Shown: one piece after another, positions 9,665 to 60,512 of the stretch
How the letters are laid out: the number at the start of each line of letters is the position of its first letter
How positions within the stretch are numbered: position 1 is the stretch's first letter
IMG/VR virus record: IMGVR_UViG_3300034117_002447
Span: 124,001 to 188,000 of that record
Reading direction: 5' to 3' (one strand)
DNA: 64,000 nucleotides
Position numbers and translations under genes: made by a program
The notes under the pieces: model-generated
Database searches by the model: none
What the model saw: only the letters and a program-made list of their open reading frames with translations
Told to the model about the DNA's origin: nothing

Positions 9665-9929
9665 GTTAAACAAATTATTTTTGATTTAAGGTTAAGGTAC
9701 CAAAGAATCCCGGCAATTGGTCGCCCGGCCTGAAAAAGATTGGGCGTGCCTGCACCGCCGCAAAAACCCCCTAGGCGGGGCCGCGACGTGGAGACCTCTG
9801 TGAAGCTGCGGAAGACCCGTGACTATTATGTACCGGTGAGACGGTCGCCTAATCAGTCGGAAAGCTGTTCAGGTAATAAAAAAATGGGAACCTGCTCAAG
9901 ATAAATAACTTAAAATATTTTAGTATACT

Positions 9930-11183
9930 ATGAACTTAATTAAAGGCTATAGCCAATGGTTAAACGAAAACCTAAACGCTATAAACGAAAACTGGTCAAT
10001 CGATTCAGTTACTCTCAGTACTGATGACTTTAGCATTGACGAGGCAAAATACGATCAGTACATCGCAAGTCAAGCTGGAGCACAATTTAGACTATTCACG
10101 CAAGAGGTTGCAAAGTCTAACATCCAAAACATTAAAAAGAAAGAGGCTCATCAAGAAATTTTGGGAAGCCTTGCTAAACACGGCCAAACGGCTAAAAAAG
10201 GTTTCTTGGGAATCTTTGGCGGTAAGAGCCTAGACGAAGTAGTTACCGCTACTCTTGATAGTTTGATTGCAGGTCAATCAAAAATTGCCTACAGCAAAAC
10301 AACGGTGGACTACAATCCTGGAGCTGACGGTACAGGTAGAATCATGACTCAGGGTCGAATTGGGATTAATTCACTGGAAATTGATACTGATCCACGTTGG
10401 AGTAAAGCAACCTCTAGTACAGGTATGTTGTTGGGATTTGTTAACGCATATAACCAAAATGCATTTGAAATGGGTCAAGGTCAATTCATCTTGAGCCAAA
10501 GAATGGGAGAAGACGGTTACCTAGATATTACAACTACTCCAGTAGTAGACGCTGACAATCTATATTTGTACACTCAACAATTACTTGGCGACCTTGCTGC
10601 AGGTAAGGATCTTAAAGTAGACGTTGCTCAAACTGGAGGTTCCGATGCAGTTACTGGCAAATTCGCTGCAGAATTCGCAGCTGGTTCTGACCAAGTTACT
10701 CCAGCTATTCAAGCTGAGGTTGCAAAAGCAGTAGAGTTATGTTTAGCTAAATTCCCAGCAGGATCACGCCCTGATAAATTTACTTTAACTTCTGGTGCAA
10801 GTACTGAATGGAACGGTAAACAAATGCCTAAGGCTGACGGAACTGGTGCAGTAACTCCAAAGGATGATGCAACTAAAAATCAAGATCTTGCTTACCGTCG
10901 TGGTGTTGCTTTCATGAATGCTCTTAACTCTGGACTTAAAGCAAAAGGACATCCAGGTTTTGATGCATACGAAGTTGCATGGTCAATCGGTGCAAGTGGT
11001 CAACCTGCAAATGCAGCTGACCGTTTCGTTGACCTAAACATTGAAAAAAATGCAGTTAAGCCTAAAGCTGTAGAAACTACTAAGACTACTGCTGTTTCAA
11101 CTGGAAATGCAACTACTAACGTTAGAGGAAAAGCTCAATTCTTTGAATTGAAACTTACTTTAACTGCAGCAGCCGCTAAATAA
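9930..11183 (+). CDS. Late protein, capsid-targeting-like N-terminus, C-terminal OmpA-like domain
   Basis: MNLIKGYSQWLNEN; FAAGSDQVT...SGASTE...NQDLAYRRGVAF resembles the OmpA_C N..LS..RA motif. Confidence 0.7.
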   Translation: MNLIKGYSQWLNENLNAINENWSIDSVTLSTDDFSIDEAKYDQYIASQAGAQFRLFTQEVAKSNIQNIKKKEAHQEILGSLAKHGQTAKKGFLGIFGGKSLDEVVTATLDSLIAGQSKIAYSKTTVDYNPGADGTGRIMTQGRIGINSLEIDTDPRWSKATSSTGMLLGFVNAYNQNAFEMGQGQFILSQRMGEDGYLDITTTPVVDADNLYLYTQQLLGDLAAGKDLKVDVAQTGGSDAVTGKFAAEFAAGSDQVTPAIQAEVAKAVELCLAKFPAGSRPDKFTLTSGASTEWNGKQMPKADGTGAVTPKDDATKNQDLAYRRGVAFMNALNSGLKAKGHPGFDAYEVAWSIGASGQPANAADRFVDLNIEKNAVKPKAVETTKTTAVSTGNATTNVRGKAQFFELKLTLTAAAAK

Positions 11184-11254: not shown

Positions 11255-11758
11255 TTAATACTTTTTATCTAGTGCATGGTAAGATGCAGTTACTCTAAAT
11301 GAGTCTTTGCCAAATTCCATAACTGTGGTAATCGTTGACTCAGCTGCAAATTTACTTGCAATTCTAAAATTATGATTAGGCGAATCGATCCAAGCCTGTA
11401 CCACAATTTTTGCGATTTCCTGCAATACCTCATCAGTTAAAGCATTCACACTGTATTTTTTAGAAACAGTTGTCCCACTAGTCTTATACATGTAGATACA
11501 CTCAGTATTATATCCAACAAAAGTACTGTCTCCACGGGTATGATCAATTTCAGGTCTACCTGCATTAAGATTAGTTAACTGATAACTTCTTTTACGTAAA
11601 GCACCATTATTGAATTTGGTTACTGGTGAACCACCCAAGCCCAAACGGTACACGTTAATTTCTTGCCAGATCAAAGAGTCTAATCTACTAGATCTAACTT
11701 GTTGCGCTTGGGCAGAGATTGAGATTAGGATTGCGAATAGGATTGCTAATTTTTTCAT
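11255..11758 (-). CDS. Secreted CAP/SCP-domain protein
   Basis: Signal peptide MKKLAILFAILISISAQA; IWQEINVYR, AWIDSPNH. Confidence 0.75.
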   Translation of the reverse strand: MKKLAILFAILISISAQAQQVRSSRLDSLIWQEINVYRLGLGGSPVTKFNNGALRKRSYQLTNLNAGRPEIDHTRGDSTFVGYNTECIYMYKTSGTTVSKKYSVNALTDEVLQEIAKIVVQAWIDSPNHNFRIASKFAAESTITTVMEFGKDSFRVTASYHALDKKY

Positions 11759-11843: not shown

Positions 11844-13463
11844 ATGAAACATTCAATTATTAAAGGCTACTCTAGCTGGTTAAACGAAAACTTGTTAATC
11901 GCAGAAGCTGAAGGAACTGATATTGGTGCTCTTTACAAAGCTGGCGATCGTGCAGGTTTAGTAAATGCAGCAATGGCAGCAGACTCTGCTGAAATAAAAG
12001 CTCACCCAGCTTACGAATCTGTAATGCAATGGTGGAAAAACGGAGAGGGCGACCTCAACTTATTCAAATCGCTTCTTAAAAAGAGTTCATCTGCTAAAAC
12101 TGACAGATTACGTTCCCTAAAATCGATATATTACTGGACAGGCGGCGGTACGGTTAAGGGTGCAGCTCCTAGAGCAGATATGTTTTATAAAGTAGCAGAT
12201 TCAATTATTGCAAACGGTGCAAAGGCTGGGGTAACTCCAGAAAAGCTAGCTCAACTTAAACAAGCGGTTGACTTATTAAAGACTGCAAAGACTGAAGGTT
12301 TCGAATTAAGAACATCAGCTCTATTCGGTTCAATTATACCAGGTGCTCTAACTGATGGAGTATTCGATACTGGCGGTAAAAAAATTGATGTGATTGCTGA
12401 ACTAGCCAAGCCTCAGGTCATGGATACTCTTAAGAAAGCACTAACTGCTTACCGATTAAATACTAATGCAAGCAAGGAATTAATGGTAGATCCTTTAACT
12501 TCTGCTAAATTCCTGATTGCACAGAGAACCAATAAAGCAACAGTCAGTCAATACTGGATAGCCTCAATGTCGTTAAGCGATACTGAAAAGAAGTCTATGC
12601 TAGATAACTTTAAAGCAAAAGCTGAAGCGTATGCTGCTCGTAAAAAGGATCCTAATGTAACTTTCGATAAAGCAATTTTAGTTGCTACGAATTTATACAT
12701 TGCACCAAAGAACGAAAAAATTACAGTTGTCGCTGGAACACCAGCTGCACCAGCTGCCCCAGTTGTTCAGGCTTTTTCATATCCTGAAAGTGCAAACGGT
12801 AACGCTAAGAGCCCAGCTTTCCAAAAGGGTTTACAGTTATTTCCAGATGATGGAGTGACTATTCAACCTACTGCTCAAGCTGAATTAGCCGCAACTGTTA
12901 AATCTGCAGTAGATGCAGTTAAAGCAGCCGGCGGTACAATTACAGCTGTTTCAACTTGGGGTTATGCAAGTACTTCACAAGTAGGAACGACTTACAAGTC
13001 AGCTGATAAAACCTCAAAGAAGGAAAATAACGTTGCGTTAGCAAACGATAGACTTGCGTCTATTAATAGCGCGCTAGCTGCCGCTCTTACTGAAAACGGA
13101 ATAACTATTGCACCAACCGTTGATGCTAAAAATTTAGCTGAACCGAATAGAGGTCCTGACTGGACTGATAAAGATAAAACTGATGCTAAGTGGGGTAAAC
13201 CTGGAGCAAGAACTCCAGAGTACCAAGCAACTTACGGACCATGGAGATATGCAGTTGCGTTCTTCCAGTTAACGTATACAATCACATCAACCGAACCTAC
13301 TCCAGTTAAGTCAACTGCAACTCCTAGTGGAGAATGGAACTCAGTAATTACATGGTCTGATGAATCATTCCAAATTGAGTTACCTAGAATTCAATTCGGA
13401 ACCGCTTTACCTAAAGTACCAATGTATAAAGGTGGAAGCTCTACTGCATGCCCGATATTTTAA
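11844..13463 (+). CDS. Late protein, capsid-targeting-like N-terminus, C-terminal OmpA-like domain
   Basis: MKHSIIKGYSSWLNEN; FPDDGVTI...GYASTSQV...NNVALANDRLASI. Confidence 0.7.
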   Translation: MKHSIIKGYSSWLNENLLIAEAEGTDIGALYKAGDRAGLVNAAMAADSAEIKAHPAYESVMQWWKNGEGDLNLFKSLLKKSSSAKTDRLRSLKSIYYWTGGGTVKGAAPRADMFYKVADSIIANGAKAGVTPEKLAQLKQAVDLLKTAKTEGFELRTSALFGSIIPGALTDGVFDTGGKKIDVIAELAKPQVMDTLKKALTAYRLNTNASKELMVDPLTSAKFLIAQRTNKATVSQYWIASMSLSDTEKKSMLDNFKAKAEAYAARKKDPNVTFDKAILVATNLYIAPKNEKITVVAGTPAAPAAPVVQAFSYPESANGNAKSPAFQKGLQLFPDDGVTIQPTAQAELAATVKSAVDAVKAAGGTITAVSTWGYASTSQVGTTYKSADKTSKKENNVALANDRLASINSALAAALTENGITIAPTVDAKNLAEPNRGPDWTDKDKTDAKWGKPGARTPEYQATYGPWRYAVAFFQLTYTITSTEPTPVKSTATPSGEWNSVITWSDESFQIELPRIQFGTALPKVPMYKGGSSTACPIF

Positions 13464-13509: not shown

Positions 13510-14055
13510 TTATAGCTTAACCGCAAACAGACAGTTTGCGTATGCTGAGAATCGGTTCTTTTGAGTATCATAGCCGCCGTTTATATCGAATGCTGCTACT
13601 GTTACTTTTGGGTCGAGCAGCGCTGCATTATGACTAGCTGATTTAACCCATTCGTTGAATATTATAATAACGGTTGATTTATCAACGTTAACCGATTTTA
13701 GTGAGTTATAATTACTGCTGATTTTATAATGAGCACCGACATTTTCTCTGAAACTATATCGTGAAAAGTGTTTCTTCCAGTCCTGATCAAATTTTTCAAT
13801 TCGGGTAAGAGGGCCGGTGTAGTAAATTCCATCTGGAGTTAATGGATATTCGTAGTGCTCCAATGTGTCAGCACGTATCATCCAATTGACATGAAGAGTT
13901 ACAGCAGAGTCGAGAGTAGCTGAGTATTCTACTGGACTAAGCCCGTGACTTGCTCTGTGAGCATTCACCAATTCTAAAAAGATTTTATTTTCAGAATCTT
14001 GAGCAGTTGCGCTAATCGCAAAACTAAAAAGTATGATATGTATTAGCTTTTTCAT
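13510..14055 (-). CDS. Secreted CAP/SCP-domain protein
   Basis: Signal peptide; LELVNAHRASHGL, LEH, ENVG, EWVKSASHNAALLDP. Confidence 0.85.
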   Translation of the reverse strand: MKKLIHIILFSFAISATAQDSENKIFLELVNAHRASHGLSPVEYSATLDSAVTLHVNWMIRADTLEHYEYPLTPDGIYYTGPLTRIEKFDQDWKKHFSRYSFRENVGAHYKISSNYNSLKSVNVDKSTVIIIFNEWVKSASHNAALLDPKVTVAAFDINGGYDTQKNRFSAYANCLFAVKL

Positions 14056-14118: not shown

Positions 14119-15081
14119 ATGAGTAAAGTTAGAATATTATCAATAGACGGTGGTGGATTAAGAGGAATCGTTCCATTACTTATCCTTAAAGAAATTGAAA
14201 ATCAGCAAGGTAAAAAAATACACGAATTATTTGATGTCATAGTAGGTACCTCAACTGGCGGTATTATTGCATGCGGATTAACTTGTACGAAAGACGGAGT
14301 TAATCCTTATTTAACAATCGACCAGCTAATAGAACTTTACACAACTAAAGGTAATGTTATTTTCCCTTATAGTAAAAATATATTAGCTAAAGTAATTAGA
14401 GGAGTTAATTCAGTATTTAATCCTAAATTCTCTCCAAAAGGTTTAGACGGTTTATTGGAAAATTATTTTGGTGATATGATGATATCGCAATCACTAAAGC
14501 CTATCATCGTTAGTTCGTATGACCTAAAGAACAATGAAGTTATTATGTTTAAAACTAGAACTGCTAAATGGTCTAAAGAACGATTTGATGTTAGATTAAA
14601 AGATGTTTGTCGGGCTACGTCAGCCGCGCCGACCTACTTACCGTCATACGAAATGGTGTTTGATGGCAAAGACCGGATCTTAGTGGATGGTGGTGTTTAC
14701 ATTAACAATCCAGCAATGGCAGCAGTTGCTGAAGTTCTTAAAACAAGACCGGGTATTAAGATAGAAGATATTGAATGCTTATCGTTAGGCACCGGAAATC
14801 ATTCAGAATCGTTAGGTATTAAAACTGAAAGTTGGGGTATAGCTAATTGGGCACAACCTATAACAACAGTTATGATGCAAGCCTCTTCTAAATCAGTTGT
14901 TTACGAATGTCAACAAATATTAGAAAAGTATTTAAGAGTTCAATTAGAGATTGATGATGAAAAGAAAAGCGACATGTCAGATTCAAGACCGGCTACTACT
15001 CAATACATTGTTGATAAAGTAAATAAAGATATTATTAGTAATAAAAAAACAATGACTAATATTAAAAATTTCCTTAAATAA
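14119..15081 (+). CDS. Patatin-like phospholipase
   Basis: ILSIDGGGLRG, GTSTGG (GxSxG), SAAPTY, DGG. Confidence 0.95.
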   Translation: MSKVRILSIDGGGLRGIVPLLILKEIENQQGKKIHELFDVIVGTSTGGIIACGLTCTKDGVNPYLTIDQLIELYTTKGNVIFPYSKNILAKVIRGVNSVFNPKFSPKGLDGLLENYFGDMMISQSLKPIIVSSYDLKNNEVIMFKTRTAKWSKERFDVRLKDVCRATSAAPTYLPSYEMVFDGKDRILVDGGVYINNPAMAAVAEVLKTRPGIKIEDIECLSLGTGNHSESLGIKTESWGIANWAQPITTVMMQASSKSVVYECQQILEKYLRVQLEIDDEKKSDMSDSRPATTQYIVDKVNKDIISNKKTMTNIKNFLK

Positions 15082-15086
15082 AGAAT

Positions 15087-15740
15087 ATGAAAACCGTTAA
15101 ATTATTCATAGTATCACTAATTTTATTAATTACGGCTACTGGCTTTGTTCCAGAGCCAACTACTGTTAAATTAGAACACAAAGGCTATACTGCTTATTAT
15201 AGTAAGCAGTTACACTATTCTCTTAAGGTTGAATGGTGGGACACAAAAGCCCGTCTTGAATGTCCAGGCTCAAAGGTTGCACGCAAGGACAGATTCGCGC
15301 CAGATCCATTACTTCCAGCTGAAACTGATCTTATGGAAGATTATGTAGGTTCAGGAACCGATAGAGGTCACATGTGCCCGGCTGCAGATAACCAGTGCAG
15401 CCCAGTTCTACAAGAAGAGTGCTTCTACTTTTCAAACATGGCTCCTCAATACCATTCCTTAAATGCTGGAGACTGGAAAAGATTAGAGGTCCGAACCAGA
15501 GAACTTGCTAGCCAATACGATTCAGTTATGGTATGGTGCGGTTCAGTCGGAGCAGCCAAGAAAATTGGAACGACGTCAGTGCCGACTAAATGTTGGAAAG
15601 TTATTTTTATTAAGAGGACAAAAACGTTTGAGGCTTATATTTTTAATAATACACCCGACAAACCGGTGGGTCTTGATAAATGGAAGGTTAAACCAGCTGA
15701 TGTAGAGAAATTGACAGGATATAGGTTCAAGGTTAAGTAA
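15087..15740 (+). CDS. DNA/RNA non-specific endonuclease (NucA/EndA-like) with signal peptide
   Basis: DRGHMCP, SNMAPQ...NAGDWKRLE, VPTKCWKV. Confidence 0.93.
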   Translation: MKTVKLFIVSLILLITATGFVPEPTTVKLEHKGYTAYYSKQLHYSLKVEWWDTKARLECPGSKVARKDRFAPDPLLPAETDLMEDYVGSGTDRGHMCPAADNQCSPVLQEECFYFSNMAPQYHSLNAGDWKRLEVRTRELASQYDSVMVWCGSVGAAKKIGTTSVPTKCWKVIFIKRTKTFEAYIFNNTPDKPVGLDKWKVKPADVEKLTGYRFKVK

Positions 15741-15785: not shown

Positions 15786-16382
15786 ATGGCAGACATCGCA
15801 CAACAATTTGCTGGATTACCAATTGAAGACCTTATTGTGTCTCCGATTGTAGGTATGGCAAAAGGGCAAGCAAAATTAAACGATGTAACGTGGAAATATA
15901 TTTCTGAAGTTGCATTCGTAACAGACAAAGACGGCAAAACTCAAGCTCGTTCTTTGGATGTAGAAATGAACCGAGTTGTTACTGACGGTACAACCGGCGA
16001 ACAAACAGTTCAAACTTTATACTCAAAGGTTCCTATGTTACCTTTAGTTCCACTTCCTTCATTAGCTATCACATCAGCTGATATTGAATTCTCAATGGAA
16101 GTAAAAACTTCTGAAGTAGACAAATCAAGCACTGATACTGAATCTTCAATTCAAGCTTCTGCTTCTGGCGGATTCTGGGGAATGAAGTACTCGGTGAGCA
16201 TGGCTGGTAAAGTTGCGACTCACAAAGAGAACACACGTAGCACAGATAACTCTGCAAAGTACAATGTAAAAGTACACGCTGAGCAATTACCTGCAACTGA
16301 AGGTATGTTAAAGCTTTCTGACTATTTGACTCAAATGTTAGAGCCAACTTTAATTCCTCTTACGGCTGATCCAAACAAGTAA
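15786..16382 (+). CDS. DUF2589-family protein
   Basis: FAGLPIEDLIVSP...Q.KL; VPMLPLVPLPSLAI..ADIEFSMEV; AKYNVKVHAEQLPATEGM. Confidence 0.8.
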   Translation: MADIAQQFAGLPIEDLIVSPIVGMAKGQAKLNDVTWKYISEVAFVTDKDGKTQARSLDVEMNRVVTDGTTGEQTVQTLYSKVPMLPLVPLPSLAITSADIEFSMEVKTSEVDKSSTDTESSIQASASGGFWGMKYSVSMAGKVATHKENTRSTDNSAKYNVKVHAEQLPATEGMLKLSDYLTQMLEPTLIPLTADPNK

Positions 16383-16436: not shown

Positions 16437-16489
16437 GTTTAAACCGATTCAGCTTGAGTAGTATAATTATTAATACAAATCGCACAACT

Positions 16490-17203
16490 ATGGCTAAAAT
16501 TAATCTAGAAGAATTACTCGGCGGTCTACAAGAAGCAGCGTTAATCGTTCTCGGTATTCAGGAAAGACAACACATTAATACTATTTCAAAGTACTTTACA
16601 CCGGAAGGCGAACCTCTGACTAAAACATTTTTGCTCGGAGACAAGACCTTGGAAATTCCTCTCTATATCTTAGCTGACCATTCGTCAATGGGACTAGAAG
16701 AACTGGAAATAGACTTTGATATCAGATTACTTGCATCAGACGATAAGACACCATCCAGTCTTAAAGAGAATATTTTACCGATTTTTAAGAAGATTGAGGA
16801 TCAAACTATTCGTGGAGTTCAAGAGGCTCTAGTTAAATTAGGAGAGCCATATAAGACTCTACTTGGGAAAACCGGCGCCAAGAAGAATGGAGTTGACGGA
16901 GTTATTGGCCCAAAATGTAGAGAAGCCCTAATGCGTTACCAATTAAAAAACAGGATTCCGCAGACTGGTGAAGCAGACGACGAGACTTGCAAACTGCTTG
17001 GAGTCTCAACTGCGTCTGACTACACGCATACTGTAACCAATATTTCAGTTGACAGTAATGCACCAAACTCTGATAGCAAAGCTGGCATGGCAACCGTGAA
17101 AGTTAAATTCAAAAAGGACGAAAAACCTGAAGCCGTTTCCAGACTGGTTGAGATGTTAATTCAAAAATTAGATGATGTAGGTCATACTGACAAAACCTCT
17201 TAA
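16490..17203 (+). CDS. DUF2589-like partner protein with inserted peptidoglycan-binding domain
   Basis: LEELLGGLQEA..., IPLYILADHSSMGLEELEIDF; insert VQEAL...GVDGVIGPKCREALMRYQ...TGEAD; ends ATVKVKFK...PEAVSRL. Confidence 0.7.
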   Translation: MAKINLEELLGGLQEAALIVLGIQERQHINTISKYFTPEGEPLTKTFLLGDKTLEIPLYILADHSSMGLEELEIDFDIRLLASDDKTPSSLKENILPIFKKIEDQTIRGVQEALVKLGEPYKTLLGKTGAKKNGVDGVIGPKCREALMRYQLKNRIPQTGEADDETCKLLGVSTASDYTHTVTNISVDSNAPNSDSKAGMATVKVKFKKDEKPEAVSRLVEMLIQKLDDVGHTDKTS

Positions 17204-17569: not shown

Positions 17570-17758
17570 TTAGTGTTGATAATCGTCTTCGTAATCTTCT
17601 TCGTCTTCTTCTGCTTCACAATGTTCTTTACAATCAGAGCAAATATCGCCCATCATAATAGGAGCACCGCAACAGTTTGAAGTCTCACCAGAGAAAGCAT
17701 CACTTGGATCCCAGCTCTCGTTTACGAATTTCGTAAAACTGTTAACTAAATTTTTCAT
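17570..17758 (-). CDS. Small Cys-rich acidic protein, capsid-targeting-like N-terminus
   Basis: MKNLVNSFTKFVNES; SNCCGAP...ICSDCKEHC. Confidence 0.8.
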   Translation of the reverse strand: MKNLVNSFTKFVNESWDPSDAFSGETSNCCGAPIMMGDICSDCKEHCEAEEDEEDYEDDYQH

Positions 17759-17778: not shown

Positions 17779-18240
17779 TTAAGGTTCGTACTCTTCAGAG
17801 GTCTCATCATCTGCTAACCCTAAGGCTTCAGAATTAAAGTTGTCCCAAGCTTTAATAGAGTCTTTCATTGTCTTATTAAGTTCAACTAATTCGCTCTTTA
17901 ATGTCTCGACCTTTGTTTTATCAGCCTCTTCGACTGGACTCTTACGAATCTCATTAGGAATTTCTAAAAATTCTTCTTGTTTCTTTTTAAAGGCTTTAAT
18001 TGCATCTCTTCTAGCTGTGTCTAGTTCTTGATACTTTTCAATTTCTGATTCGGCTGTGTCGTCTTCAACCGGAGCCTCTGCTGGAATCCCGGCATCAACT
18101 GGAGTCTCAGCTGGAACTTCTGCAACCGGTTCCGCTGGAACTTCTGCTGGAGCTTCAACTGGAGCGTCTGGTGTTACCGGCGTATCAACTGCCTCTAGTT
18201 TCTCAGATTCATCAAGCCATTGTTGATATTTATGAATCAT
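17779..18240 (-). CDS. Pro/Ala/Glu-rich coiled-coil late protein, capsid-targeting-like N-terminus
   Basis: MIHKYQQWLDES; PAE repeats; late box at 18258. Confidence 0.8.
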   Translation of the reverse strand: MIHKYQQWLDESEKLEAVDTPVTPDAPVEAPAEVPAEPVAEVPAETPVDAGIPAEAPVEDDTAESEIEKYQELDTARRDAIKAFKKKQEEFLEIPNEIRKSPVEEADKTKVETLKSELVELNKTMKDSIKAWDNFNSEALGLADDETSEEYEP

Positions 18241-18291: not shown

Positions 18292-19089
18292 ATGAAACTT
18301 TTATCAACATATAGCGATTGGTTAAATGAAAATCATAATCCAAGACCCCTAAGGAAGTTAACGGAACTTGATATTAACAGAAAATTCGGACGTAATCCAC
18401 AAACTGGAGATAAGTACGAAACTGAGCTATTTCCAATGTTTAGAAGACTAAAACCTCGAATTGAGGCTCTGTCTAAAAAACCTAGCCTTGAAGAATGGTT
18501 CGCAATGATGCAGAATTCAGATAATCAATTTTACTCAATGGTTCAGGCAGATACACTTGCCCAGCCAGACGTCAGAGAATTATGGAGAGACTTAACTGGT
18601 CAACGTGCTTCAAAAATGAAGAAGTATAACTTATCTGAAAGCGCAGAGGATGCGGTTTGGAAAAGCGAAATTGATCCCGAATGGACAGTCATTGTTCTTT
18701 TCTCGGACGATGAGCTCTATGCAAAAGTTGCAAAAATATTTGATAGCTTAGGAATTGCTTTCGCTGATATGGTTTCAAAAACAATATTCGTCGATGGACA
18801 GGAAGTTGAGTCTCAGAATCTAGGAGACGACCATCTGTTGGCAATCGAAGCACATGAAATTTCGCATTCACTACTAAATCACGGAGGCTCTGACCGAGGA
18901 ATGGCAGCTTACGACGAGAGACAGGAGAGAGAAGCTGACTGGTTAGCTATCCGAATCCTAGAGAATTTAGGATACGGTGAAGCTTCTGCAATTTTAGAGA
19001 AACGATATAACGAATACTATGACGAGCAATCGTCAGAACTTGAGAACACAGACACACTTGAAGTGGCACTTCAAGATTACGTCAACTAA
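18292..19089 (+). CDS. Late protein with C-terminal HExxH zinc-metallopeptidase-like domain
   Basis: MKLLSTYSDWLNEN; AHEISH...EREADWLAIRIL. Confidence 0.75.
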   Translation: MKLLSTYSDWLNENHNPRPLRKLTELDINRKFGRNPQTGDKYETELFPMFRRLKPRIEALSKKPSLEEWFAMMQNSDNQFYSMVQADTLAQPDVRELWRDLTGQRASKMKKYNLSESAEDAVWKSEIDPEWTVIVLFSDDELYAKVAKIFDSLGIAFADMVSKTIFVDGQEVESQNLGDDHLLAIEAHEISHSLLNHGGSDRGMAAYDERQEREADWLAIRILENLGYGEASAILEKRYNEYYDEQSSELENTDTLEVALQDYVN

Positions 19090-19447: not shown

Positions 19448-19636
19448 TCATTTGATATGACCAGTAATCTCTTTGTAATACGCCCATAACTCTTGGCACT
19501 TTTCGTATTCTTCCTTGCTTTCCAAGTACTTAATTATATCTAGGACTTCATTCCAGTAGGCGGATGTGATTCCTTTTTTATCGACATCTTTATACTTTCT
19601 AGTCCATTCTCTCTCGTTTGCTATATCGATTGCCAT
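19448..19636 (-). CDS. Small protein with UVR-like EEYEKC motif
   Basis: IKYLESKEEYEKCQEL. Confidence 0.65.
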   Translation of the reverse strand: MAIDIANEREWTRKYKDVDKKGITSAYWNEVLDIIKYLESKEEYEKCQELWAYYKEITGHIK

Positions 19637-20594
19637 GACTGTACCCGAATTTTTGGCGAGGCTGTACCTCTATAGTATATTTAACCTTGGATCCAAGTAA
19701 TTCAGTAATGCATTCAACGAAATCCGCTGTGTGTAGACTTAGAACAGAGTCGTAATGGTCATCCCGATAACCTCCAAAAAGAGCACATGAAACCGGTAGA
19801 GGTTTTCCCAATAATTCGTCCATTTCTTTTACCCATCTCCAAAAAAGAGTAGAGCAAGCAACCCAATAATCAGTTTCGCATTGGCTTCCTAAGTTGTCAT
19901 CTGCATGAGAATCCGCTCCGTGACACCAAACAACATAGCCAATTTTACCGGCAAGGATCGCCGCCTTTGTTCGTTCCAACCAAATTGCCAAATCTTCTAA
20001 GTATCGATCATCATGGCCTATTGGATTAATATTGAAATCTCTAGGAACTGCCTTATTTAAGTCTTTGCAAAAAGTTCGGCTGTCCTCAATTGAATTTCCG
20101 AAATGACCGTCAAGATCAAAGTACGCTCCGCTTAATCCAAACTCTTCGTATATTTTAAGTGATGCAATTACCTGTCCACTAAACGTACAGAAACCGCTGC
20201 CTCCGCTTGGGCGAGCATGGTGAAATCCACTGGTTGGGCTGAAGCTTACTTGATCTGGATTTACGATTGAATTTCTGATCGCTGAGTACAACGAAGAGTT
20301 TGTGTATCTTATTGATTCAGCGAATTGAGGTGACCAAGACAATCCATTAGAACAGTATCGACCCCTTCCTTTGAAAAAGTCTTTCACGTAACTTTTTTCA
20401 TGGGCAATTCTGAAATCAGCATTCGAATATGGATTAAACTCTGAAGTAATTTCAAAATTATCAATTAGTCCGTGCATTTCAAGGTATTCCAATAAAAGCT
20501 TAGGCTTTAATGGAGACTTGCTGTAATTTGAAGTTTTATCGTTTTGTAAAACCTGCTTTGGATTATAAAACGTCTTTATTTTAGTAGATCGCAT
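19599..20594 (-). CDS. Zn-dependent histone deacetylase family (HDAC/AcuC-like) protein
   Basis: GFHHA, GSGFC, DLDGHFGN, GADSHADD, GGY. Confidence 0.93.
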   Translation of the reverse strand: MRSTKIKTFYNPKQVLQNDKTSNYSKSPLKPKLLLEYLEMHGLIDNFEITSEFNPYSNADFRIAHEKSYVKDFFKGRGRYCSNGLSWSPQFAESIRYTNSSLYSAIRNSIVNPDQVSFSPTSGFHHARPSGGSGFCTFSGQVIASLKIYEEFGLSGAYFDLDGHFGNSIEDSRTFCKDLNKAVPRDFNINPIGHDDRYLEDLAIWLERTKAAILAGKIGYVVWCHGADSHADDNLGSQCETDYWVACSTLFWRWVKEMDELLGKPLPVSCALFGGYRDDHYDSVLSLHTADFVECITELLGSKVKYTIEVQPRQKFGYSHGNRYSKRERMD

Positions 20595-20678
20595 AATTAG
20601 GTCTTTTGTTAAATATAATATACCAAAAAAGCCCGATTAATATCAGGCTTTCTGTATTCTACCAATAGACTTCGTGAA

Positions 20679-21389
20679 TTAGCTTCGAATATTCTTATTT
20701 TTAAAAAAATCGTCCAAGTCTTCCATGTGCTCGAATAGTTCAGTTGAACTAAGTGGAGGTAAATTATCCAGGTCAGATTTTGGAAAAACGCCAGTAACAA
20801 ATGAATAAGTGGTTAACTCATTCGCTAGGGTTCTGATAAAATCAAAAAGGCTCCAGCTCGTAATTCCACCGAACTGCGATTCCATAGATTCGTCAACGTA
20901 CTCAAGAAGATCATCGATGACCAGAGGCTTGTCTAATAGCTGGGTGATTGATATTTCGTGGATGCTGATGAATTCATCTTCATCAGAGCCTTCATCGCCA
21001 GATTCATCTAGTGCCATCAGAGTAGGATACGCGTCAAGTTCAGCATCTTCCTCGTCGAGTGGCTTAACTTGGCCGACCCACAACATACAAATTAAACCAA
21101 CCTCTTCAATTGAGTCTTCACGGTCCGCTCCAAATAATGAATCTAGTAGACCCTCAAATGAAACTGTTTTTAGATAATTAATAAAAACAAAATTAATTTG
21201 TTCAGCGTAAGGTTTTAATAGAGTAAGTACCTCCCGAATGGTTACACCTTCCTCAACGAATACTTCGTACGGTAAGTACCAAGTAATAGGTAATTCAGAT
21301 TTGGAAATATCTCGGTCTTGCCAGTCTTCTGCCGTTTCATCCCAGAAGGAGACTTGAATGGATTTCTTATGGAATGTGATCTTTTGCAT
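20679..21389 (-). CDS. Very acidic hypothetical protein
   Basis: 236-aa ORF; ATAGATAA variant box upstream. Confidence 0.8.
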   Translation of the reverse strand: MQKITFHKKSIQVSFWDETAEDWQDRDISKSELPITWYLPYEVFVEEGVTIREVLTLLKPYAEQINFVFINYLKTVSFEGLLDSLFGADREDSIEEVGLICMLWVGQVKPLDEEDAELDAYPTLMALDESGDEGSDEDEFISIHEISITQLLDKPLVIDDLLEYVDESMESQFGGITSWSLFDFIRTLANELTTYSFVTGVFPKSDLDNLPPLSSTELFEHMEDLDDFFKNKNIRS

Positions 21390-21471
21390 AATTTCGTTTT
21401 GTTTATCTATTTTACTACATTAGTACCACCGGATTCATGAATAAATAACTCAAAGAAATTTTTATTACATT

Positions 21472-23442
21472 ATGATAAATTCCTTAAGAGACATAGTTAA
21501 CGAGTCCGCTTTTAATCAAGACGGCCTGGTTGGCGAAATGGGAGTTAAACGACCAGAGAGACTTGCTCAAAGTCACATGGGTAGAGTTAGACAATCAACA
21601 ATTGACAGAAATCAACAATTAGCAAACAGGCCAGAGACCCGATCGTTTGCGGAAATTTCAGTAGATCTAGTTAGAGCCCTTAAGGGAGTTCGACGATTGG
21701 ATATTACAATGGAAAAACCTTCAAACTCCAGAGATTATTACCCTAAATTTCCACAACCTATCGTTGACTTAATGGCTGAACTTAAAAATGTTGACGCTAG
21801 CCGATTCGCTAATGAATTCGGAAGATGGAGAGACGTTTACCCAGGAGACGATAATGCAATTCACTTTCGTACTGAAGGACCTTCGGATTTTCAACGAAGC
21901 CACTTTCCAAATGGAGGTATTCCAAGCGGATTAAGAGGAGCTGGTTTGGGTTATAAAATGTACCGAACTCTATTAAAATACGCAGACTATATTTCGTCTA
22001 ATCCATCTGGTACTACTGAGAAGGATAAAGCATGGGGATCAATGTTGACTTACAAATCCAACCCAGATGGCTCTCCATCAGAAGATGATGCTCACGCAAT
22101 TATCGGCGCAGGCAACTGGATGGCAATGGATAAATCCATGTCAACCGCTGCAAAAATTGATGTGGCTAACAGATTTATTGAAAGAGTAATTGGTAGAGAT
22201 AAAACAAAGCCTGATCGTTTTGATATGGACGATGAATTACTTGCAATTTTACCCGATGAATCACTAGTTCTATTAAATAGAGATTATCTTAATTCATTAG
22301 TTACGGATAATCGATTAACACCTGAAAGAGTTCAGGCTATCTTGGCTGCACGAACTGAGGCTCAACGAAGAGAAGAAGAACAAAGAGAACGTGAAAGAGT
22401 TGAAGCAGCTGAACGTAGAACTCGTGAAGAGGCAGCAACTCGTCAAAGACTAGCTGACCGAATTACACAATACGGAGCAGATCCTGATGCTGAATGGAAC
22501 GTTGGAGACTTTATCGTAGTTAAGAGCTACTTATACGATGCATCATATTCGTCTCTACCAATTCGACGAGTTATTTTAGATAGAAATGGTTCGTATGTCG
22601 CTGCCTCAATTTCTAATGCTATACAGATTGACAATGGTAACCTTGAGCCAGGAAATGCTGGAGATACTAGAACGACTACCGATAAATCACAATGGATTAA
22701 AGTAATCCCAGAAGCAATTCCGGATCTTAGTCGTGTTAATTTATCAACAGTTGAACAAGAGTACATGAGATCATTCATTGATCCTGAGGAAATTGAAAGA
22801 CGTCGAGAAACTGAAAGACAGGCTGCTATTACTAGAAGAGAAGCTGAACGTACTCAAAATGCAGAACGAGCTACTCGACCTGGAGTATTTGCGGAAATGC
22901 CACAGAGCGGATCTGATCTTAAACGTCGAGTTGAAGCACGTGGACTCTTACCGGAACTTGACTTATTGAAAAAGATTAGAACCGGCGACTTTGCTAAGTT
23001 CATTGTACTAGGTCCTCAAGAGAGAGAAGCGTTTAGATCATCTTTTGGTATCCCAGTTTATGTAGCATTCAGTAGAGCAGGAAGATCAATTCGTCCAGTA
23101 GATTCAGTTGACGACCTATTGAACCGCACTGGTTACGATGCTAAATTAATAAACGTTGTAACTGGCCATATTATCGAAAGACCATTTGCTGGTCTTGGAC
23201 TGATGGCATACGAATTGGAAACAGTAACTGAGGAAGATAAATTAAGAGCTAGAGCAGGAGACCGTTACTATATCGCTAATCACATGAATAATTGGGGAAT
23301 CTTTGCTAGTTGCGATTACACTACCCGAAATACAGCAAATCAGCCATTTATCTACTTAAATACATTCGGTGGAGCTACTCGACCTACACCAGTTAGATTA
23401 GATCTTTTACGTAAAGTATCAGGTCAGCCTATTGAATTGTAA
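21472..23442 (+). CDS. Large late protein with GNAT-like acetyltransferase domain and coiled coils
   Basis: MINSLRDIVNES; IPSGLRGAGLGYKMYRTLL...ISS...T.E..KAW (acetyl-CoA-binding RGxGxG-like motif); R/E-rich helices. Confidence 0.65.
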   Translation: MINSLRDIVNESAFNQDGLVGEMGVKRPERLAQSHMGRVRQSTIDRNQQLANRPETRSFAEISVDLVRALKGVRRLDITMEKPSNSRDYYPKFPQPIVDLMAELKNVDASRFANEFGRWRDVYPGDDNAIHFRTEGPSDFQRSHFPNGGIPSGLRGAGLGYKMYRTLLKYADYISSNPSGTTEKDKAWGSMLTYKSNPDGSPSEDDAHAIIGAGNWMAMDKSMSTAAKIDVANRFIERVIGRDKTKPDRFDMDDELLAILPDESLVLLNRDYLNSLVTDNRLTPERVQAILAARTEAQRREEEQRERERVEAAERRTREEAATRQRLADRITQYGADPDAEWNVGDFIVVKSYLYDASYSSLPIRRVILDRNGSYVAASISNAIQIDNGNLEPGNAGDTRTTTDKSQWIKVIPEAIPDLSRVNLSTVEQEYMRSFIDPEEIERRRETERQAAITRREAERTQNAERATRPGVFAEMPQSGSDLKRRVEARGLLPELDLLKKIRTGDFAKFIVLGPQEREAFRSSFGIPVYVAFSRAGRSIRPVDSVDDLLNRTGYDAKLINVVTGHIIERPFAGLGLMAYELETVTEEDKLRARAGDRYYIANHMNNWGIFASCDYTTRNTANQPFIYLNTFGGATRPTPVRLDLLRKVSGQPIEL

Positions 23443-24235: not shown

Positions 24236-24601
24236 ATGATTCATAATTTTAATCAATTCACAGAAAAAACAAATGAGGGTTTTTGGGACTGGCTTACCGG
24301 CAAGAAGGAAGAGACCTCTGCTCAGAAAAAAGAAGACGGCACACTCCTAGACGATAAGGTCGAAGCGTTCTATGCTACATTGGAGGATTTTGCAAATTCT
24401 GGAAAATCAGTAGCTGTCCAAAACGGCGGAACCTATACCTATTCTAAATTAGTAGAAGACATTCAAGCAGCGCTAGAGTTCTTAGGTTACGAATTACCTG
24501 AACACGGAGTTGATGGTTATTTTGGACCAGAAACAGCAATAGCTATTCAGAAATTCAATGAGGATACTACAAAAATCAGCACTTCAGATAATGGAAAATA
24601 A
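24236..24601 (+). CDS. Peptidoglycan-binding-domain protein, capsid-targeting-like N-terminus
   Basis: MIHNFNQFTEKTNE; IQAALEFLGY...GVDGYFGPETAIAIQKF. Confidence 0.85.
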   Translation: MIHNFNQFTEKTNEGFWDWLTGKKEETSAQKKEDGTLLDDKVEAFYATLEDFANSGKSVAVQNGGTYTYSKLVEDIQAALEFLGYELPEHGVDGYFGPETAIAIQKFNEDTTKISTSDNGK

Positions 24602-25844
24602 GATATTAAATTTCAAACAGTTTTTAACTGAAGCCGCAAATGGCCGACTTGATACTACTGGATTAGAACCTATCGCTGGTGCAGGACAACCGACTAAAGG
24701 TCATAAATTAAATTCAATTGCAGCGAAAGCATACGAAGAAATGAGAGCTGCTGCCGAAGCAGACGGAATAACTTGGGGAATTACTGACTCGTACAGAGAT
24801 TACGATTCGCAAGTTGATGTCGCTGCACGTAAAGGTCTCTATAAAAATGGAGGACTTGCGGCAGTTCCTGGAACTTCCAATCACGGATGGGGAAGCGCTC
24901 TTGACTTAGACCTTAGTGCTGAAGCTCTTCAGTGGTTGAAGGACAATGCTGCAACTTATGGATTCACAAATATTCCAAGAGAGTCTTGGCATTGGGAACA
25001 CAAAGGCAGCGTTGAATTTGCAAAGACTGGTAAAGAGGGAGCCGGTCGAACTACTGACTCTGTTTTAATTGATGCAAATCTTATTAACCGACTAATCACA
25101 GCCCTTAAAGATAAAAACTTTTCACAAGCTGATCTAGATAAACACACAACTCTTACCCCAGGAAAAGGGCAGAATTTTAAATCTACCTCAAAATTCCCTG
25201 AAGAAAATATGGATGCCTTACTAAAGGCGATGGATCAAAACGGAATAACTAATGAATTTGCTAGAAAGGCAGTACTTGGAGTTATTTCAAAAGAGTCTCC
25301 TAATTTAACTAGTGAAATTTCTTATTTCGGTACCCCTATTTCAAGAATACGTGAGGTATTTCCAAGCAAATTATCCCAATACACCGATGAACAAATTGAG
25401 GGTTGGAGGACCCAAGGCCAAGAATTATTCGATAGCCTATTTTGGGAAGCAGTATACGGTGGAAAATACGGAAACGTTTCTCCAGGAGACGGAGCTAAGT
25501 ATAGAGGCCGTGGATTTAATGGAATAACGTTTAAAGGAAATTACGAAAATCTTCAAAGAATATACGACCAAATGGGAGCTAAACTTGGAAAAGTTAATAT
25601 TGTTGAGAATCCTGAAGAATTGGAAAAACCTGAAGTTGCAGCAGAATTCGCAGTAATTTATTTCATTGATTCGTTTGATCGCAAAGGAAAAGATCCAAAT
25701 GCATATACTGACTTAGACAGTGCAGTACAAGACTACGTTCAGGCAAATGCCGGATGGGGCTCTTCATTGGGATCAACTGTCGGTAGAGAAGCTATAGCGA
25801 AAGCAAGCGCCTTCGCTAAGAGCCTAGATGCAGAAGTTGCTTAA
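24591..25844 (+). CDS. Bifunctional cell-wall hydrolase: M15B D,D-peptidase plus GH19-like glycoside hydrolase
   Basis: MENKILNFKQFLTE; DSYR, PGTSNHGWGSALD, ESWHW; YRGRGFNGITFKGNY. Confidence 0.88.
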   Translation: MENKILNFKQFLTEAANGRLDTTGLEPIAGAGQPTKGHKLNSIAAKAYEEMRAAAEADGITWGITDSYRDYDSQVDVAARKGLYKNGGLAAVPGTSNHGWGSALDLDLSAEALQWLKDNAATYGFTNIPRESWHWEHKGSVEFAKTGKEGAGRTTDSVLIDANLINRLITALKDKNFSQADLDKHTTLTPGKGQNFKSTSKFPEENMDALLKAMDQNGITNEFARKAVLGVISKESPNLTSEISYFGTPISRIREVFPSKLSQYTDEQIEGWRTQGQELFDSLFWEAVYGGKYGNVSPGDGAKYRGRGFNGITFKGNYENLQRIYDQMGAKLGKVNIVENPEELEKPEVAAEFAVIYFIDSFDRKGKDPNAYTDLDSAVQDYVQANAGWGSSLGSTVGREAIAKASAFAKSLDAEVA

Positions 25845-60266: not shown

Positions 60267-60512
60267 TTAGTTTAGTCGATTTTCATTCTTATCTAGCGCT
60301 GGATTAGCGAAGATCTTGATTTGCTTAACTGCCTCAATATGCTCATACATATAAGCTTCTAAATAGGCAATGAACTCATCTAAGACTGGATTTGCTCCAA
60401 ACATTTGATTCGAAAGGACTCGCTTCATTAGGGCATCTTTGTATTTGTAACCTAGATGAAGACGTTGGTCTTTTCTATTATACACTGTTTGGTATAGAGA
60501 GTTTCTTATCAT
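60267..60512 (-). CDS. Hypothetical late protein
   Basis: 81-aa ORF coupled to baseplate gene. Confidence 0.75.
   Translation of the reverse strand: MIRNSLYQTVYNRKDQRLHLGYKYKDALMKRVLSNQMFGANPVLDEFIAYLEAYMYEHIEAVKQIKIFANPALDKNENRLN

What the first reader, a model, noticed from the sequence alone, without database searches (positions are those of the whole stretch)
19599..23442. Writer/eraser pair: HDAC-family deacetylase beside a putatively packaged GNAT-like acetyltransferase
Seen: a full Zn-HDAC motif set in 19599-20594, and one gene away a divergent late protein with a cargo-type N-terminus and an RGAGLG GNAT-like motif. Inference: an injected acetyltransferase modifies host targets and the phage deacetylase later reverses this or protects phage proteins. 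A Lys-rich H1-like protein (9284) is a possible substrate. Polyamine deacetylation is an alternative role.
Basis: inference. Interest (0 to 1): 0.6.

Follow-up and report, generated by a model that had tools for sequence, protein, structure and literature searches.

The report
Phage deacylase beside packaged GNAT-like protein
A 271-kb lake phage encodes an intact zinc deacylase of the histone-deacetylase family one gene away from a late, probably capsid-packaged protein with a very divergent acetyltransferase-like domain; both genes are real, but whether they work as a pair is still unproven.

Summary
Both observations hold. ORF 19599-20594(-) is an HDAC-family enzyme (Pfam 58 bits). Its His-His dyad, Zn ligands and catalytic Tyr are invariant in 38 relatives. 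Its closest solved relatives are class IV (HDAC11-like) fatty-acyl deacylases, not polyamine deacetylases.

ORF 21472-23442(+) matches no Pfam, PHROG or NCBIfam model. Its N-domain model (pLDDT 85.5) finds almost only GNAT-superfamily folds in four structure libraries. Scores are weak, with one significant hit (E 5.8e-4). The conserved R-x-x-G-x-G loop sits just before the helix at 159-171, where GNATs bind CoA.

The "cargo" N-terminus is real. A T4-like capsid-targeting leader occurs on 14 of 326 ORFs (0.3-0.4 expected). The genome encodes T4-type prohead protease and capsid protein, and the gene has a late-promoter-like ATAAATAA. The deacylase has neither leader nor late motif.

The pairing is only partly supported. 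Adjacency is inherited in one clade. It recurs once, in tandem, in a distant phage where only the GNAT-like domain is shared. However, 9 of 15 deacylase-bearing records outside that clade lack the domain, four of them at least 92% complete.

Verdict: two real enzymes and a likely injected acyltransferase-like effector. A writer/eraser link is plausible (about 0.3) but unproven.

The parts
19599..20594 (-). HDAC-family Zn deacylase gene, 331 aa. Catalytic residues: H125/H126 (nt 20222-20217), D160/D162/H164 (nt 20117-20103), D228 (nt 19913-19911), Y276 (nt 19769-19767).
   Evidence: Pfam PF00850 at 58.1 bits. PDB alignments to 9gkv and 9gz5. Residues invariant in 38 relatives. 1088 homologs, mostly on phage-like contigs.
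20617..20649 (-). Element just upstream of the deacylase: an 8-bp hairpin (20649-20630) running into a T-run (20630-20625), then TGGTATATT (20625-20617), which resembles an extended -10 box.
   Evidence: Sequence read. Promoter-like site 20646-20617 with TG extension listed. The T-run plus TGGTAT block is conserved in 8 diverged clade members. The promoter role is inferred. The terminator scan did not list the hairpin.
19448..19636 (-). Small conserved ORF (62 aa) overlapping the deacylase 3' end by 38 nt. It is followed by a strong terminator-like hairpin at 19437-19415.
   Evidence: tblastn identity of 49-78% in 21 of the 25 related loci. Terminator-like site with 10 pairs, 7 of them G-C. 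Function unknown.
20679..21389 (-). Acidic 236-aa protein between the two genes. It is divergent from the 656-aa gene and next to it in all 25 related loci.
   Evidence: No Pfam, PHROG or NCBIfam match. Absent from the L070 arrangement.
21441..21448 (+). ATAAATAA, a late-promoter-like motif 31 nt upstream of the 656-aa gene's ATG.
   Evidence: There are 78 sites in the genome, and 58 genes have one 8-70 nt upstream. These include the baseplate wedge gene and most leader-bearing genes. Resemblance to the T4 late promoter TATAAATA is from established knowledge.
21472..23442 (+). 656-aa multidomain protein (p656), a putative capsid-packaged, ejected effector.
   Evidence: 115 full-length homologs of about 650 aa, all on metagenomic phage contigs. 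Syntenic in 25 IMG/VR loci.
21472..21537 (+). Leader or propeptide, residues 1-22. It has a capsid-targeting-like motif with candidate cleavage sites after E11 (VNE|S) or E22 (VGE|M).
   Evidence: E11, S12, E22, M23 and G24 are at least 90% conserved. Residues 1-22 have pLDDT below 50. Leader statistics. T4 CTS properties from PMC9026906.
21691..22137 (+). GNAT-superfamily-like core, residues 74-222. It includes the invariant R142-S-H144 strand and motif A, R155-G-A-G-L-G160 (nt 21934-21951).
   Evidence: Model pLDDT 85.5. Structure searches. Conservation.
22489..22776 (+). Middle small beta-barrel (SH3/Tudor-like), residues about 340-435, flanked by Arg/Glu-rich helices (about 294-332 and 438-466).
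   Evidence: Model pLDDT 88.5. Only weak matches, Z up to 4.3, to Tudor, MBT, PWWP, Mfd-RID and CarD-type barrels.
22990..23430 (+). C-terminal double beta-barrel, residues about 507-653.
   Evidence: Weak matches to tandem-Tudor and SAWADEE domains: Z 4.2-4.5 with 110-115 residues aligned. Foldseek E-values are 0.04 or worse.

Best explanation
These are two real phage enzymes with different schedules.

p656 (21472-23442):
- It is transcribed late.
- Its short N-terminal leader takes it into the prohead core, where a T4 gp21-type protease removes the leader after a conserved Glu.
- The mature protein is ejected with the DNA into the next host.
- There, its divergent GNAT-superfamily domain most likely transfers an acyl group from an acyl-CoA to an amino group of a host target, probably a protein.
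- The SH3/Tudor-like barrels, held apart by charged helices, provide target binding.

The HDAC-family enzyme (19599-20594):
- It is not packaged.
- It is made inside the infected cell from its own sigma-70-like promoter.
- It hydrolyses an N-acyl amide. By similarity this is an acyl-lysine, possibly with a chain longer than acetyl.

Shown: gene integrity, catalytic residues, fold ranking, leader statistics, motif positions, synteny.

Inferred: packaging, cleavage, timing, acyl transfer, substrates.

Whether the deacylase removes the very mark that p656 writes is open. I put that at about 0.3.
For: Deacylase:
- Pfam 58 bits and invariant catalytic set.
- The family profile scores class IV structures at 53-54 bits, against 38 for HDAC8 and about 30 for class II.

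p656 fold:
- At least 45 of the top 50 VIA-align rows are GNAT-superfamily entries. They reach Z 3.9-4.9 with about 100 residues aligned over 74-222.
- The Foldseek PDB top list is nearly all GNATs, best E 0.028.
- In the ESM Atlas, GNAT clusters follow the protein's own family.
- BFVD gives a phage 'NAT_SF domain' protein at E 5.8e-4 and TM 0.60 by target.
- Motif A lies immediately before helix 159-171.
- The only stretch hhalign pairs with canonical phage GNATs is motif A.

Cargo:
- Leader enrichment of 14 against about 0.4 expected.
- Peptidase_S77 at 38 bits and Gp23 capsid protein at 139 bits are in the genome.
- The leader has the spacing of the T4 CTS, whose residues 4 and 7 target and residues 8 and 10 direct processing (PMC9026906).
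- Other leader-bearing genes encode a lysozyme, a NUDIX hydrolase, a HAD-like hydrolase (weak, below Pfam cut-off), a VanY peptidase and a weakly M78-like protein (below Pfam cut-off).

Timing:
- ATAAATAA lies 31 nt upstream of p656, and also upstream of the baseplate gene.
- It is absent upstream of the deacylase, which has a conserved TGGTATATT instead.

Precedent:
- Injected GNATs were predicted in polyvalent proteins (PMC5512222).
- One remote member of this domain family carries ART-PolyVal.
Against: - No sequence profile links p656 to GNATs. This covers Pfam on 59 and 116 members, the family profile against PDB sequences, and hhalign (probability 0.9%).
- All PDB structural matches are below the Z of about 8 that the tool calls meaningful.
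- No GNAT-type general base or acid has been identified.
- Packaging, cleavage and timing rest on motifs only. No isolate, virion proteome or RNA run exists.
- The window's own leader misses the strict pattern.
- The broad domain family is not enriched for the leader: 8 of 114, which is about the background rate.
Confidence: 0.55

Rival explanations
1. Writer/eraser pair. The injected GNAT-like domain acylates host or phage targets, and the phage deacylase, made after genome entry, removes the same mark. This would limit the effector's action in time or protect phage proteins and the producing cell.
For: - The two genes are one gene apart in 20 of 25 related loci.
- In a distant phage (L070, HDAC 49% identical) the deacylase is followed 25 nt later, on the same strand, by a 425-aa protein. 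That protein shares only the GNAT-like domain with p656: 25% identity over 131-262.
- In the HDAC tree, L070 lies far from the clade that has the divergent layout.
- No other neighbour of the deacylase recurs across lineages, apart from a ~1270-aa protein near it in 4 loci.
- The different promoter types fit sequential action.
Against: - The deacylase occurs without any relative of the domain in 9 of 15 records outside the clade. These include genomes of 482, 391, 246 and 95 kb that are at least 92% complete, and 636-735-kb megaphages.
- In three clade members the deacylase has moved 10-20 kb away.
- In two other lineages that hold both genes they are not adjacent.
- Class IV relatives are long-chain deacylases, or inactive on peptides.
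- There are only two independent juxtapositions, and the tree is a quick, midpoint-rooted one.
Confidence: 0.3
2. The deacylase works alone on host chemistry. It may strip acyl-lysine marks from host or phage proteins, for example marks installed by host acyltransferases as regulation or defence. Alternatively it may hydrolyse a non-peptide N-acyl compound.
For: - There are 1088 homologs of at least 55% identity among the best 120, on many unrelated phage contigs.
- Gene neighbourhoods vary.
- The enzyme is present in genomes that lack the GNAT-like domain.
- Class IV clade A enzymes have no peptide activity and are thought to use non-peptide substrates (PMC13325672).
Against: - No substrate clue in the sequence or the neighbourhood.
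- The L070 tandem arrangement argues for some link with the GNAT-like domain.
Confidence: 0.35
3. The deacylase is an acetylpolyamine amidohydrolase. It would free spermidine or putrescine for packaging a 271-kb genome or for translation.
For: - HDAC-fold polyamine deacetylases exist, and viral ones are active in giant viruses (PMC9992855).
- JGI labels relatives only generically as 'AcuC-like'.
Against: - The family profile finds no chain named as an acetylpolyamine amidohydrolase at E <= 1e-5, while class IV, class I and class II chains score.
- That survey found viral APAH homologs only in Imitervirales.
- No other polyamine gene was noticed nearby.
Confidence: 0.1
4. The p656 N-domain is a GNAT-like fold that no longer transfers acyl groups. 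Under this view p656 is a structural or DNA/protein-binding internal head protein, or a scaffold for other cargo.
For: - No sequence-level GNAT signal.
- Shortened beta2-beta4 strands in the model.
- Two Arg/Glu-rich helices and three small barrels suggest a binding and spacer architecture.
- T4 internal proteins are mostly non-enzymatic.
Against: - The R-x-x-G-x-G/A loop and the R142-x-H144 strand are invariant or nearly so, even in 22-25% identical standalone homologs.
- That pattern is typical of a ligand-binding or catalytic site.
Confidence: 0.25

Closest known systems
Class IV Zn-dependent deacylases (HDAC11-like, bacterial cluster 5): VcHdaH (PDB 9gkv/9gky), liHDAC11/B (9gz5/9rjd), chrHDAC11-1/A (9rje)
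   Same: Same size class (305-319 aa against 331). Alignable over residues about 40-290. Same His-His dyad, Asp-His-Asp Zn site and GGY tyrosine. These are the best profile scores among solved structures.
   Different: Only about 25% identity. The phage family is a separate, large, mostly viral group. Activity and acyl-chain preference are unknown. Placement in a tree with reference HDACs was not done.
GNAT superfamily (Acyl-CoA N-acyltransferases), e.g. RimI/RimL-type protein acetyltransferases, NatD, phage Mu Mom
   Same: Same order of secondary-structure elements over residues 74-222. R-x-x-G-x-G loop before the alpha3-equivalent helix. GNATs dominate four independent structure searches.
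   Different: No Pfam or profile match. Short central strands. An extra N-terminal helical part (35-72) and a helical tail (225-300). Different conserved residues (R142, H144, K162, Y164, W188). The domain family of 382 cluster representatives has no Pfam, PHROG or NCBIfam match among the members scanned.
T4 internal proteins and Alt (capsid-targeted, gp21-processed, ejected proteins)
   Same: Short N-terminal leader with an aromatic residue, a hydrophobic residue three positions on, and an h-x-E cleavage motif. T4-type protease and capsid protein in the genome. Diverse enzymes share only the leader.
   Different: The leader is 11-14 residues rather than 10. There are far more leader-bearing genes (14 strict, about 30 loose). 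The cargo includes large multidomain enzymes. Nothing has been verified by proteomics.
Polyvalent proteins with GNAT and ART domains (Iyer et al. 2017, PMC5512222)
   Same: Multidomain phage proteins predicted to be packaged and injected, carrying protein-modifying domains. One remote member of this domain family has an ART-PolyVal domain.
   Different: The two GNAT families described there are RimI-like and recognisable by sequence. p656 has one enzyme-like domain plus binding modules, and uses a T4-type leader rather than MuF or portal-linked delivery.
Phage GNAT Rac of phiKMV-like phages (acetylates the RNA polymerase alpha subunit)
   Same: A phage acetyltransferase aimed at a host protein for takeover, cited in PMC7824862.
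   Different: As far as I know, Rac is an early gene product, not virion cargo. No relationship beyond the superfamily.

Membership tests
Zn-dependent HDAC / acetoin-utilisation / APAH superfamily (Pfam PF00850) | Profile match above the curated cut-off | tested here: met
   58.1 bits against 27.9. All of the best 120 homologs carry PF00850.
Zn-dependent HDAC / acetoin-utilisation / APAH superfamily (Pfam PF00850) | Catalytic His-His dyad, Asp-His-Asp zinc ligands, and transition-state Tyr in a GGY motif | tested here: met
   H125, H126, D162, H164, D228 and Y276 align to the VcHdaH residues. They are invariant in 38 relatives.
Zn-dependent HDAC / acetoin-utilisation / APAH superfamily (Pfam PF00850) | Zn-dependent amide hydrolysis | not testable with these tools
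   Needs purified enzyme.
Class IV HDAC (HDAC11-like, cluster 5) | Closer to class IV than to class I, class II or APAH sequences | tested here: met
   The family profile scores 9gz5 at 54.5 bits and 9gkv at 53.4 bits. HDAC8 reaches at most 37.8 bits and class II about 30. No tree with reference sequences was built.
Class IV HDAC (HDAC11-like, cluster 5) | Preference for medium or long acyl chains (foot pocket) | not tested
   The deacylase was not modelled. The property is known for VcHdaH and clade B enzymes.
Acetylpolyamine amidohydrolase (APAH) | Sequence affinity to characterised APAHs | tested here: not met
   None of the 59 chains with E <= 1e-5 is named as an acetylpolyamine amidohydrolase.
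GNAT superfamily | GNAT fold (beta1-alpha1-alpha2-beta2-4-alpha3-beta5-alpha4-beta6) | tested here: inconclusive
   The element order fits. At least 45 of 50 best PDB representatives are GNATs, but Z is only 3.9-4.9. There is one significant hit to a phage NAT_SF protein, E 5.8e-4. Atlas GNAT clusters give TM 0.39-0.50 by target.
GNAT superfamily | Motif A, Q/R-x-x-G-x-G/A, in the beta4-alpha3 loop | tested here: met
   R155-G-A-G158-L-G160 lies directly before helix 159-171. It is conserved in 59 homologs. The L070 homolog has R-G-T-G-L-A.
GNAT superfamily | Detectable sequence homology to GNAT profiles | tested here: not met
   No Acetyltransf family at E <= 0.1 in 59 members, at E <= 0.01 in 116 remote members, or at E <= 10 for the isolated domain. 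PF00583 is absent from the genome. hhalign probability is 0.9%.
GNAT superfamily | Acyl-CoA binding and acyl transfer | not testable with these tools
   Needs biochemistry.
T4-type capsid-targeted cargo | N-terminal targeting and processing leader shared by unrelated proteins | tested here: met
   14 of 326 ORFs against about 0.4 expected. 70 of 115 p656 relatives match.
T4-type capsid-targeted cargo | T4-type prohead protease and capsid protein in the same genome | tested here: met
   PF03420 at 38.4 bits. PF07068 at 139 bits.
T4-type capsid-targeted cargo | Presence in virions and cleavage of the leader | not testable with these tools
   No isolate exists. The phage is known only from lake metagenomes.

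The most novel reading that the evidence does not exclude
A jumbo phage runs a timed, reversible acylation cycle on its host. A capsid-delivered acyltransferase effector of a previously unrecognised GNAT-like family marks host targets at the moment of DNA entry. A phage-encoded class-IV-type deacylase, made from the incoming genome, then erases the mark. This would be a phage counterpart of the effector/metaeffector pairs of intracellular bacteria. The Tudor/CarD-like barrels may aim the writer at the transcription machinery.
Probability: 0.2. Interest if true: 0.8.

Novelty: new variant of a known kind. Interest (0 to 1): 0.5.

Why it matters
- HDAC-family enzymes are barely mentioned in phage biology. 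A comparative survey of 224 jumbo phages does not list them, yet this subfamily has more than 1000 relatives on phage-like contigs.
- The GNAT-like domain defines a family of 382 cluster representatives for which no Pfam model was found. It sits in varied phage proteins.
- The leader system marks about 15-30 proteins of one phage as probable injected cargo. That gives a ready list of host-takeover candidates.
- If the two enzymes act on one mark, this would be the first writer/eraser acylation cycle described for a phage.
- If they do not, the deacylase still points to an unexplored use of deacylation during infection.

Tried and rejected
Nearest named phage:
- megablast and tblastn with p656 against 50,697 phage records found nothing.

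Sequence routes to a GNAT assignment, all negative or not significant:
- Pfam on the protein, on 59 homologs, on the isolated domain, and on 116 remote relatives.
- PHROGs and NCBIfam.
- The family profile against PDB sequences.
- PF00583 against the whole genome.
- hhalign against four canonical phage GNATs, one of which was mis-extracted as a 49-aa ORF.
- The ESM Atlas feature search gave only leads below 0.9.

C-terminal half:
- Neither VIA-align nor Foldseek gave more than generic SH3/Tudor-like barrels. The idea of a CarD/Mfd-like RNA-polymerase-binding module stays speculative.

Promoters and terminators:
- The generic scan found no more sites than in shuffled sequence. Only the conserved motifs were used.
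- TGGTATA[AT]T is not a large promoter class. It precedes 5 genes.

Other:
- I looked for a recurrent deacylase neighbour other than the GNAT-like domain. The only other one was a ~1270-aa protein near it in 4 loci.
- I looked for the member that carries ART-PolyVal among the ten longest relatives and did not find it.
- RNA evidence: all 24 runs that hold the region are DNA lake metagenomes, so no reads were laid.
- Complex prediction was not used, because no claim here requires the proteins to bind each other.
- The careful tree search did not finish. A quick IQ-TREE tree was used instead.

Full report
**Context.** The window is the minus strand of positions 193352-257351 of a 270,962-bp virus record with direct terminal repeats, so this is a complete jumbo phage. 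The genome encodes a T4-type major capsid protein (PF07068, 139 bits). It also has a T4 gp21-type prohead protease domain (PF03420, 38.4 bits, inside a 674-aa open frame). The window itself holds a large terminase, a baseplate wedge protein and a DNA ligase. The region is found nearly identical in at least 24 lake or freshwater DNA metagenomes dated 2016-2024, and in no RNA run. No record in the phage isolate collection resembles it at the DNA level.

**The deacylase.** ORF 19599-20594(-) encodes 331 aa.
- It matches Pfam Hist_deacetyl at 58.1 bits, against a cut-off of 27.9.
- It aligns to the solved Vibrio cholerae enzyme VcHdaH (9gkv) over residues 64-288.
- In 38 relatives the residues that define the catalytic machinery are invariant. 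These are H125-H126, D160, D162, H164, D228 (GADSH) and Y276 (FGGY).

A profile of the family scores class IV structures best: liHDAC11/B (9gz5) at 54.5 bits and VcHdaH at 53.4 bits. HDAC8 reaches 38 bits and class II about 30. No chain named as an acetylpolyamine amidohydrolase reaches E <= 1e-5.

VcHdaH is a lysine de-decanoylase (PMC11532494). Class IV clade B enzymes are long-chain deacylases, while clade A enzymes show no peptide activity (PMC13325672). "Deacetylase" may therefore be too narrow a name.

The family is large. It has 1088 hits, and the best 120 are at least 55% identical, mostly on phage-like contigs. It extends to 636-735-kb megaphages at 48-55% identity.

**The 656-aa protein.** No Pfam, PHROG or NCBIfam model matches it. 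It has 115 full-length homologs of about 650 aa. One source labels one of them "RimI-like".

I folded residues 1-300 with a 59-sequence alignment and obtained pLDDT 85.5. Residues 1-22 are disordered. The structure searches gave:
- Foldseek against the PDB: nothing at E <= 1e-3, but the list is almost entirely GNATs, with NatD best at E 0.028.
- VIA-align against 48,161 representatives: at least 45 of the top 50 are GNAT-superfamily entries. About 100 residues align over 74-222, with Z only 3.9-4.9.
- ESM Atlas: GNAT clusters come directly after the protein's own family.
- BFVD: a phage protein annotated "NAT_SF domain" at E 5.8e-4 and TM 0.60 by target.

The conserved R155-G-A-G-L-G160 is an exact Q/R-x-x-G-x-G/A motif. 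It lies immediately before helix 159-171, where GNATs bind the CoA pyrophosphate.

Against this, every sequence-level test failed. hhalign paired only the motif-A stretch, at 0.9% probability. I therefore call it a GNAT-superfamily-like domain (about 0.75-0.8 for the fold). Catalysis is unproven (about 0.5).

A domain profile finds 382 cluster representatives of 115-1011 aa. These include standalone proteins of 265-289 aa, and one member fused to an ART-PolyVal domain. It is a mobile phage module, and no Pfam model matched any of the members scanned.

The C-terminal half was modelled at pLDDT 88.5. It consists of a small beta-barrel and a double barrel, separated by Arg/Glu-rich helices. Only weak Tudor, SH3 and KOW-type matches were found.

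**Cargo and timing.** Many ORFs of this genome begin with a variant of M-K-x-h-K-x-F-x-x-F-h-N-E followed by S, N, G or A.
- A strict pattern hits 14 of 326 ORFs within the first 25 residues. About 0.4 are expected from interior positions and 0.32 from shuffled N-termini.
- The spacing is aromatic, hydrophobic at +3, aliphatic at +4 and Glu at +6. This matches the T4 capsid targeting sequence, in which residues 4 and 7 target and residues 8 and 10 direct gp21 processing (PMC9026906; PMC10229621).
- Leader-bearing genes encode a lysozyme, a NUDIX hydrolase, a HAD-like hydrolase (weak, below Pfam cut-off), a weakly nucleotidyltransferase-like protein (below Pfam cut-off), a weakly M78-like protein (below Pfam cut-off), a peptidoglycan-binding protein and (from an internal Met at 24591) a VanY peptidase.
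- The family consensus of p656 fits the pattern. 70 of 115 relatives match a loose form, against 0 of 118 deacylase relatives.

A motif ATAAATAA, close to the T4 late promoter TATAAATA, lies 8-70 nt upstream of 58 genes. These include the baseplate wedge gene, most cargo genes, and p656 at -31.

The deacylase lacks this motif. It is preceded instead by a hairpin with a T-run and by TGGTATATT, an extended -10-like box. The T-run plus TGGTAT block is conserved in 8 diverged relatives.

Timing is thus inferred as p656 late and packaged, and the deacylase made by host-type transcription after entry.

**Are they a pair?** The evidence points both ways.
- In 25 IMG/VR loci with a p656 homolog, the block p153 / M78-like / small ORF / deacylase / acidic protein / p656 / exonuclease / PG-binding / VanY is conserved. 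The deacylase occupies its slot in 20 of them.
- In three of the other five the deacylase lies 10-20 kb away. Two are small fragments.
- In the HDAC tree these loci form one clade (SH-aLRT 95), so this co-occurrence is inheritance.
- Of 47 deacylase loci, 28 have the GNAT-like domain within 10 kb. 27 of them show the same layout.
- The exception, L070, is informative. Its deacylase is 49% identical and sits far from the clade in the tree. It is followed after 25 nt, on the same strand, by a 425-aa protein. That protein shares only the GNAT-like domain with p656: 25% identity over 131-262, with motif R-G-T-G-L-A.
- No other neighbour recurs, apart from a ~1270-aa protein near the deacylase in 4 loci.
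- Against a pair: 9 of 15 deacylase-bearing records outside the clade have no relative of the domain. These include genomes of 482, 391, 246 and 95 kb that are at least 92% complete. In two lineages that hold both genes they are not adjacent.

I estimate about 0.3 that the two enzymes act on the same mark.

- The Lys-rich protein at 9284-9673 is real but unclassified, and nothing links it to either enzyme.
- The polyamine alternative is possible but not favoured.

**Comparison with what is known.**
- Injected GNATs were predicted computationally in polyvalent proteins (PMC5512222).
- Phage GNATs that modify host RNA polymerase are known (Rac, cited in PMC7824862).
- HDAC-family genes are not discussed in that jumbo-phage survey.
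- Viral HDAC-fold polyamine deacetylases were reported only from giant viruses.
- What is new here is the combination, the divergent domain family and the extensive leader system. None of these is a new kind of mechanism.

**Limits.**
- No genetic code other than table 11 was used.
- No complex prediction was run.

Noticed in passing
Whole genome (G000). In the window: 9930-11183(+), 11844-13463(+), 17570-17758(-), 17779-18240(-), 18292-19089(+), 24236-24601(+), 24591-25844(+), 34422-35012(-), 38568-39038(-): A family of T4-CTS-like N-terminal leaders (MK..K.F..F.NE|S/N/G/A) sits on 14 ORFs by a strict pattern and about 30 by eye. One begins MQHIKLFEQFIAE. Window 9.9-25.8 kb is a 'cargo island'. 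The cargo includes a lysozyme, a NUDIX hydrolase, a weak HAD-like match (below cut-off), a VanY peptidase and a weakly M78-like protein (below cut-off).
   Followed up: partly
Genome-wide. Examples: window 21441-21448(+), and 30 nt upstream of 60509-62203(-): ATAAATAA lies 8-70 nt upstream of 58 of 326 ORFs, including the baseplate wedge gene and most leader-bearing genes. It is probably the late promoter, resembling T4 TATAAATA.
   Followed up: partly
window 14119-15081(+), 15087-15740(+), 11255-11758(-), 13510-14055(-): A patatin-like phospholipase (89 bits), a non-specific DNA/RNA endonuclease with what looks by eye like a signal-peptide-type N-terminus (125 bits), and two proteins with similar hydrophobic N-termini, one with a CAP domain, lie inside the cargo island. 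This is an unusual set for a phage.
   Followed up: no
window 15786-16382(+) and 16454-17203(+): Two adjacent DUF2589 proteins. The second has a peptidoglycan-binding domain inserted.
   Followed up: no
window 9284-9673(-), inside the 8-10 kb stretch where GC rises to 0.48: A 129-aa protein with a Lys/Ala/Thr-rich N-terminal tail and a TTG start. It has no family match.
   Followed up: partly
L098:1387-1875 (record G020, 246 kb, deacylase-bearing, no p656-type domain): A canonical GNAT (PF00583, 30.5 bits) carries a leader of the same type (...KSFKQFINE|S). Packaged GNATs may therefore recur in deacylase-bearing jumbo phages. This is a single case without a control set.
   Followed up: partly
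L083:1186-2055(+) and L088:1198-1995(-) (record G009, 288 kb): Two standalone homologs of 265-289 aa of the GNAT-like domain. Both start MK..K.FEAF, and neither is next to that phage's deacylase.
   Followed up: partly
G000:C1:100030-100365, in a 674-aa open frame: The gp21-type protease domain sits in a much longer open frame than I recall for T4 gp21. It may be fused to scaffold-like sequence.
   Followed up: no
window 19448-19636(-): A conserved 62-aa ORF overlaps the deacylase stop region by 38 nt. A strong terminator-like hairpin follows at 19437-19415. It probably belongs to the deacylase transcription unit.
   Followed up: partly
Deacylase homologs P0177-P0213: Many relatives are 360-446 aa long, against 331 here. 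The family therefore carries variable extensions, which were not examined.
   Followed up: no
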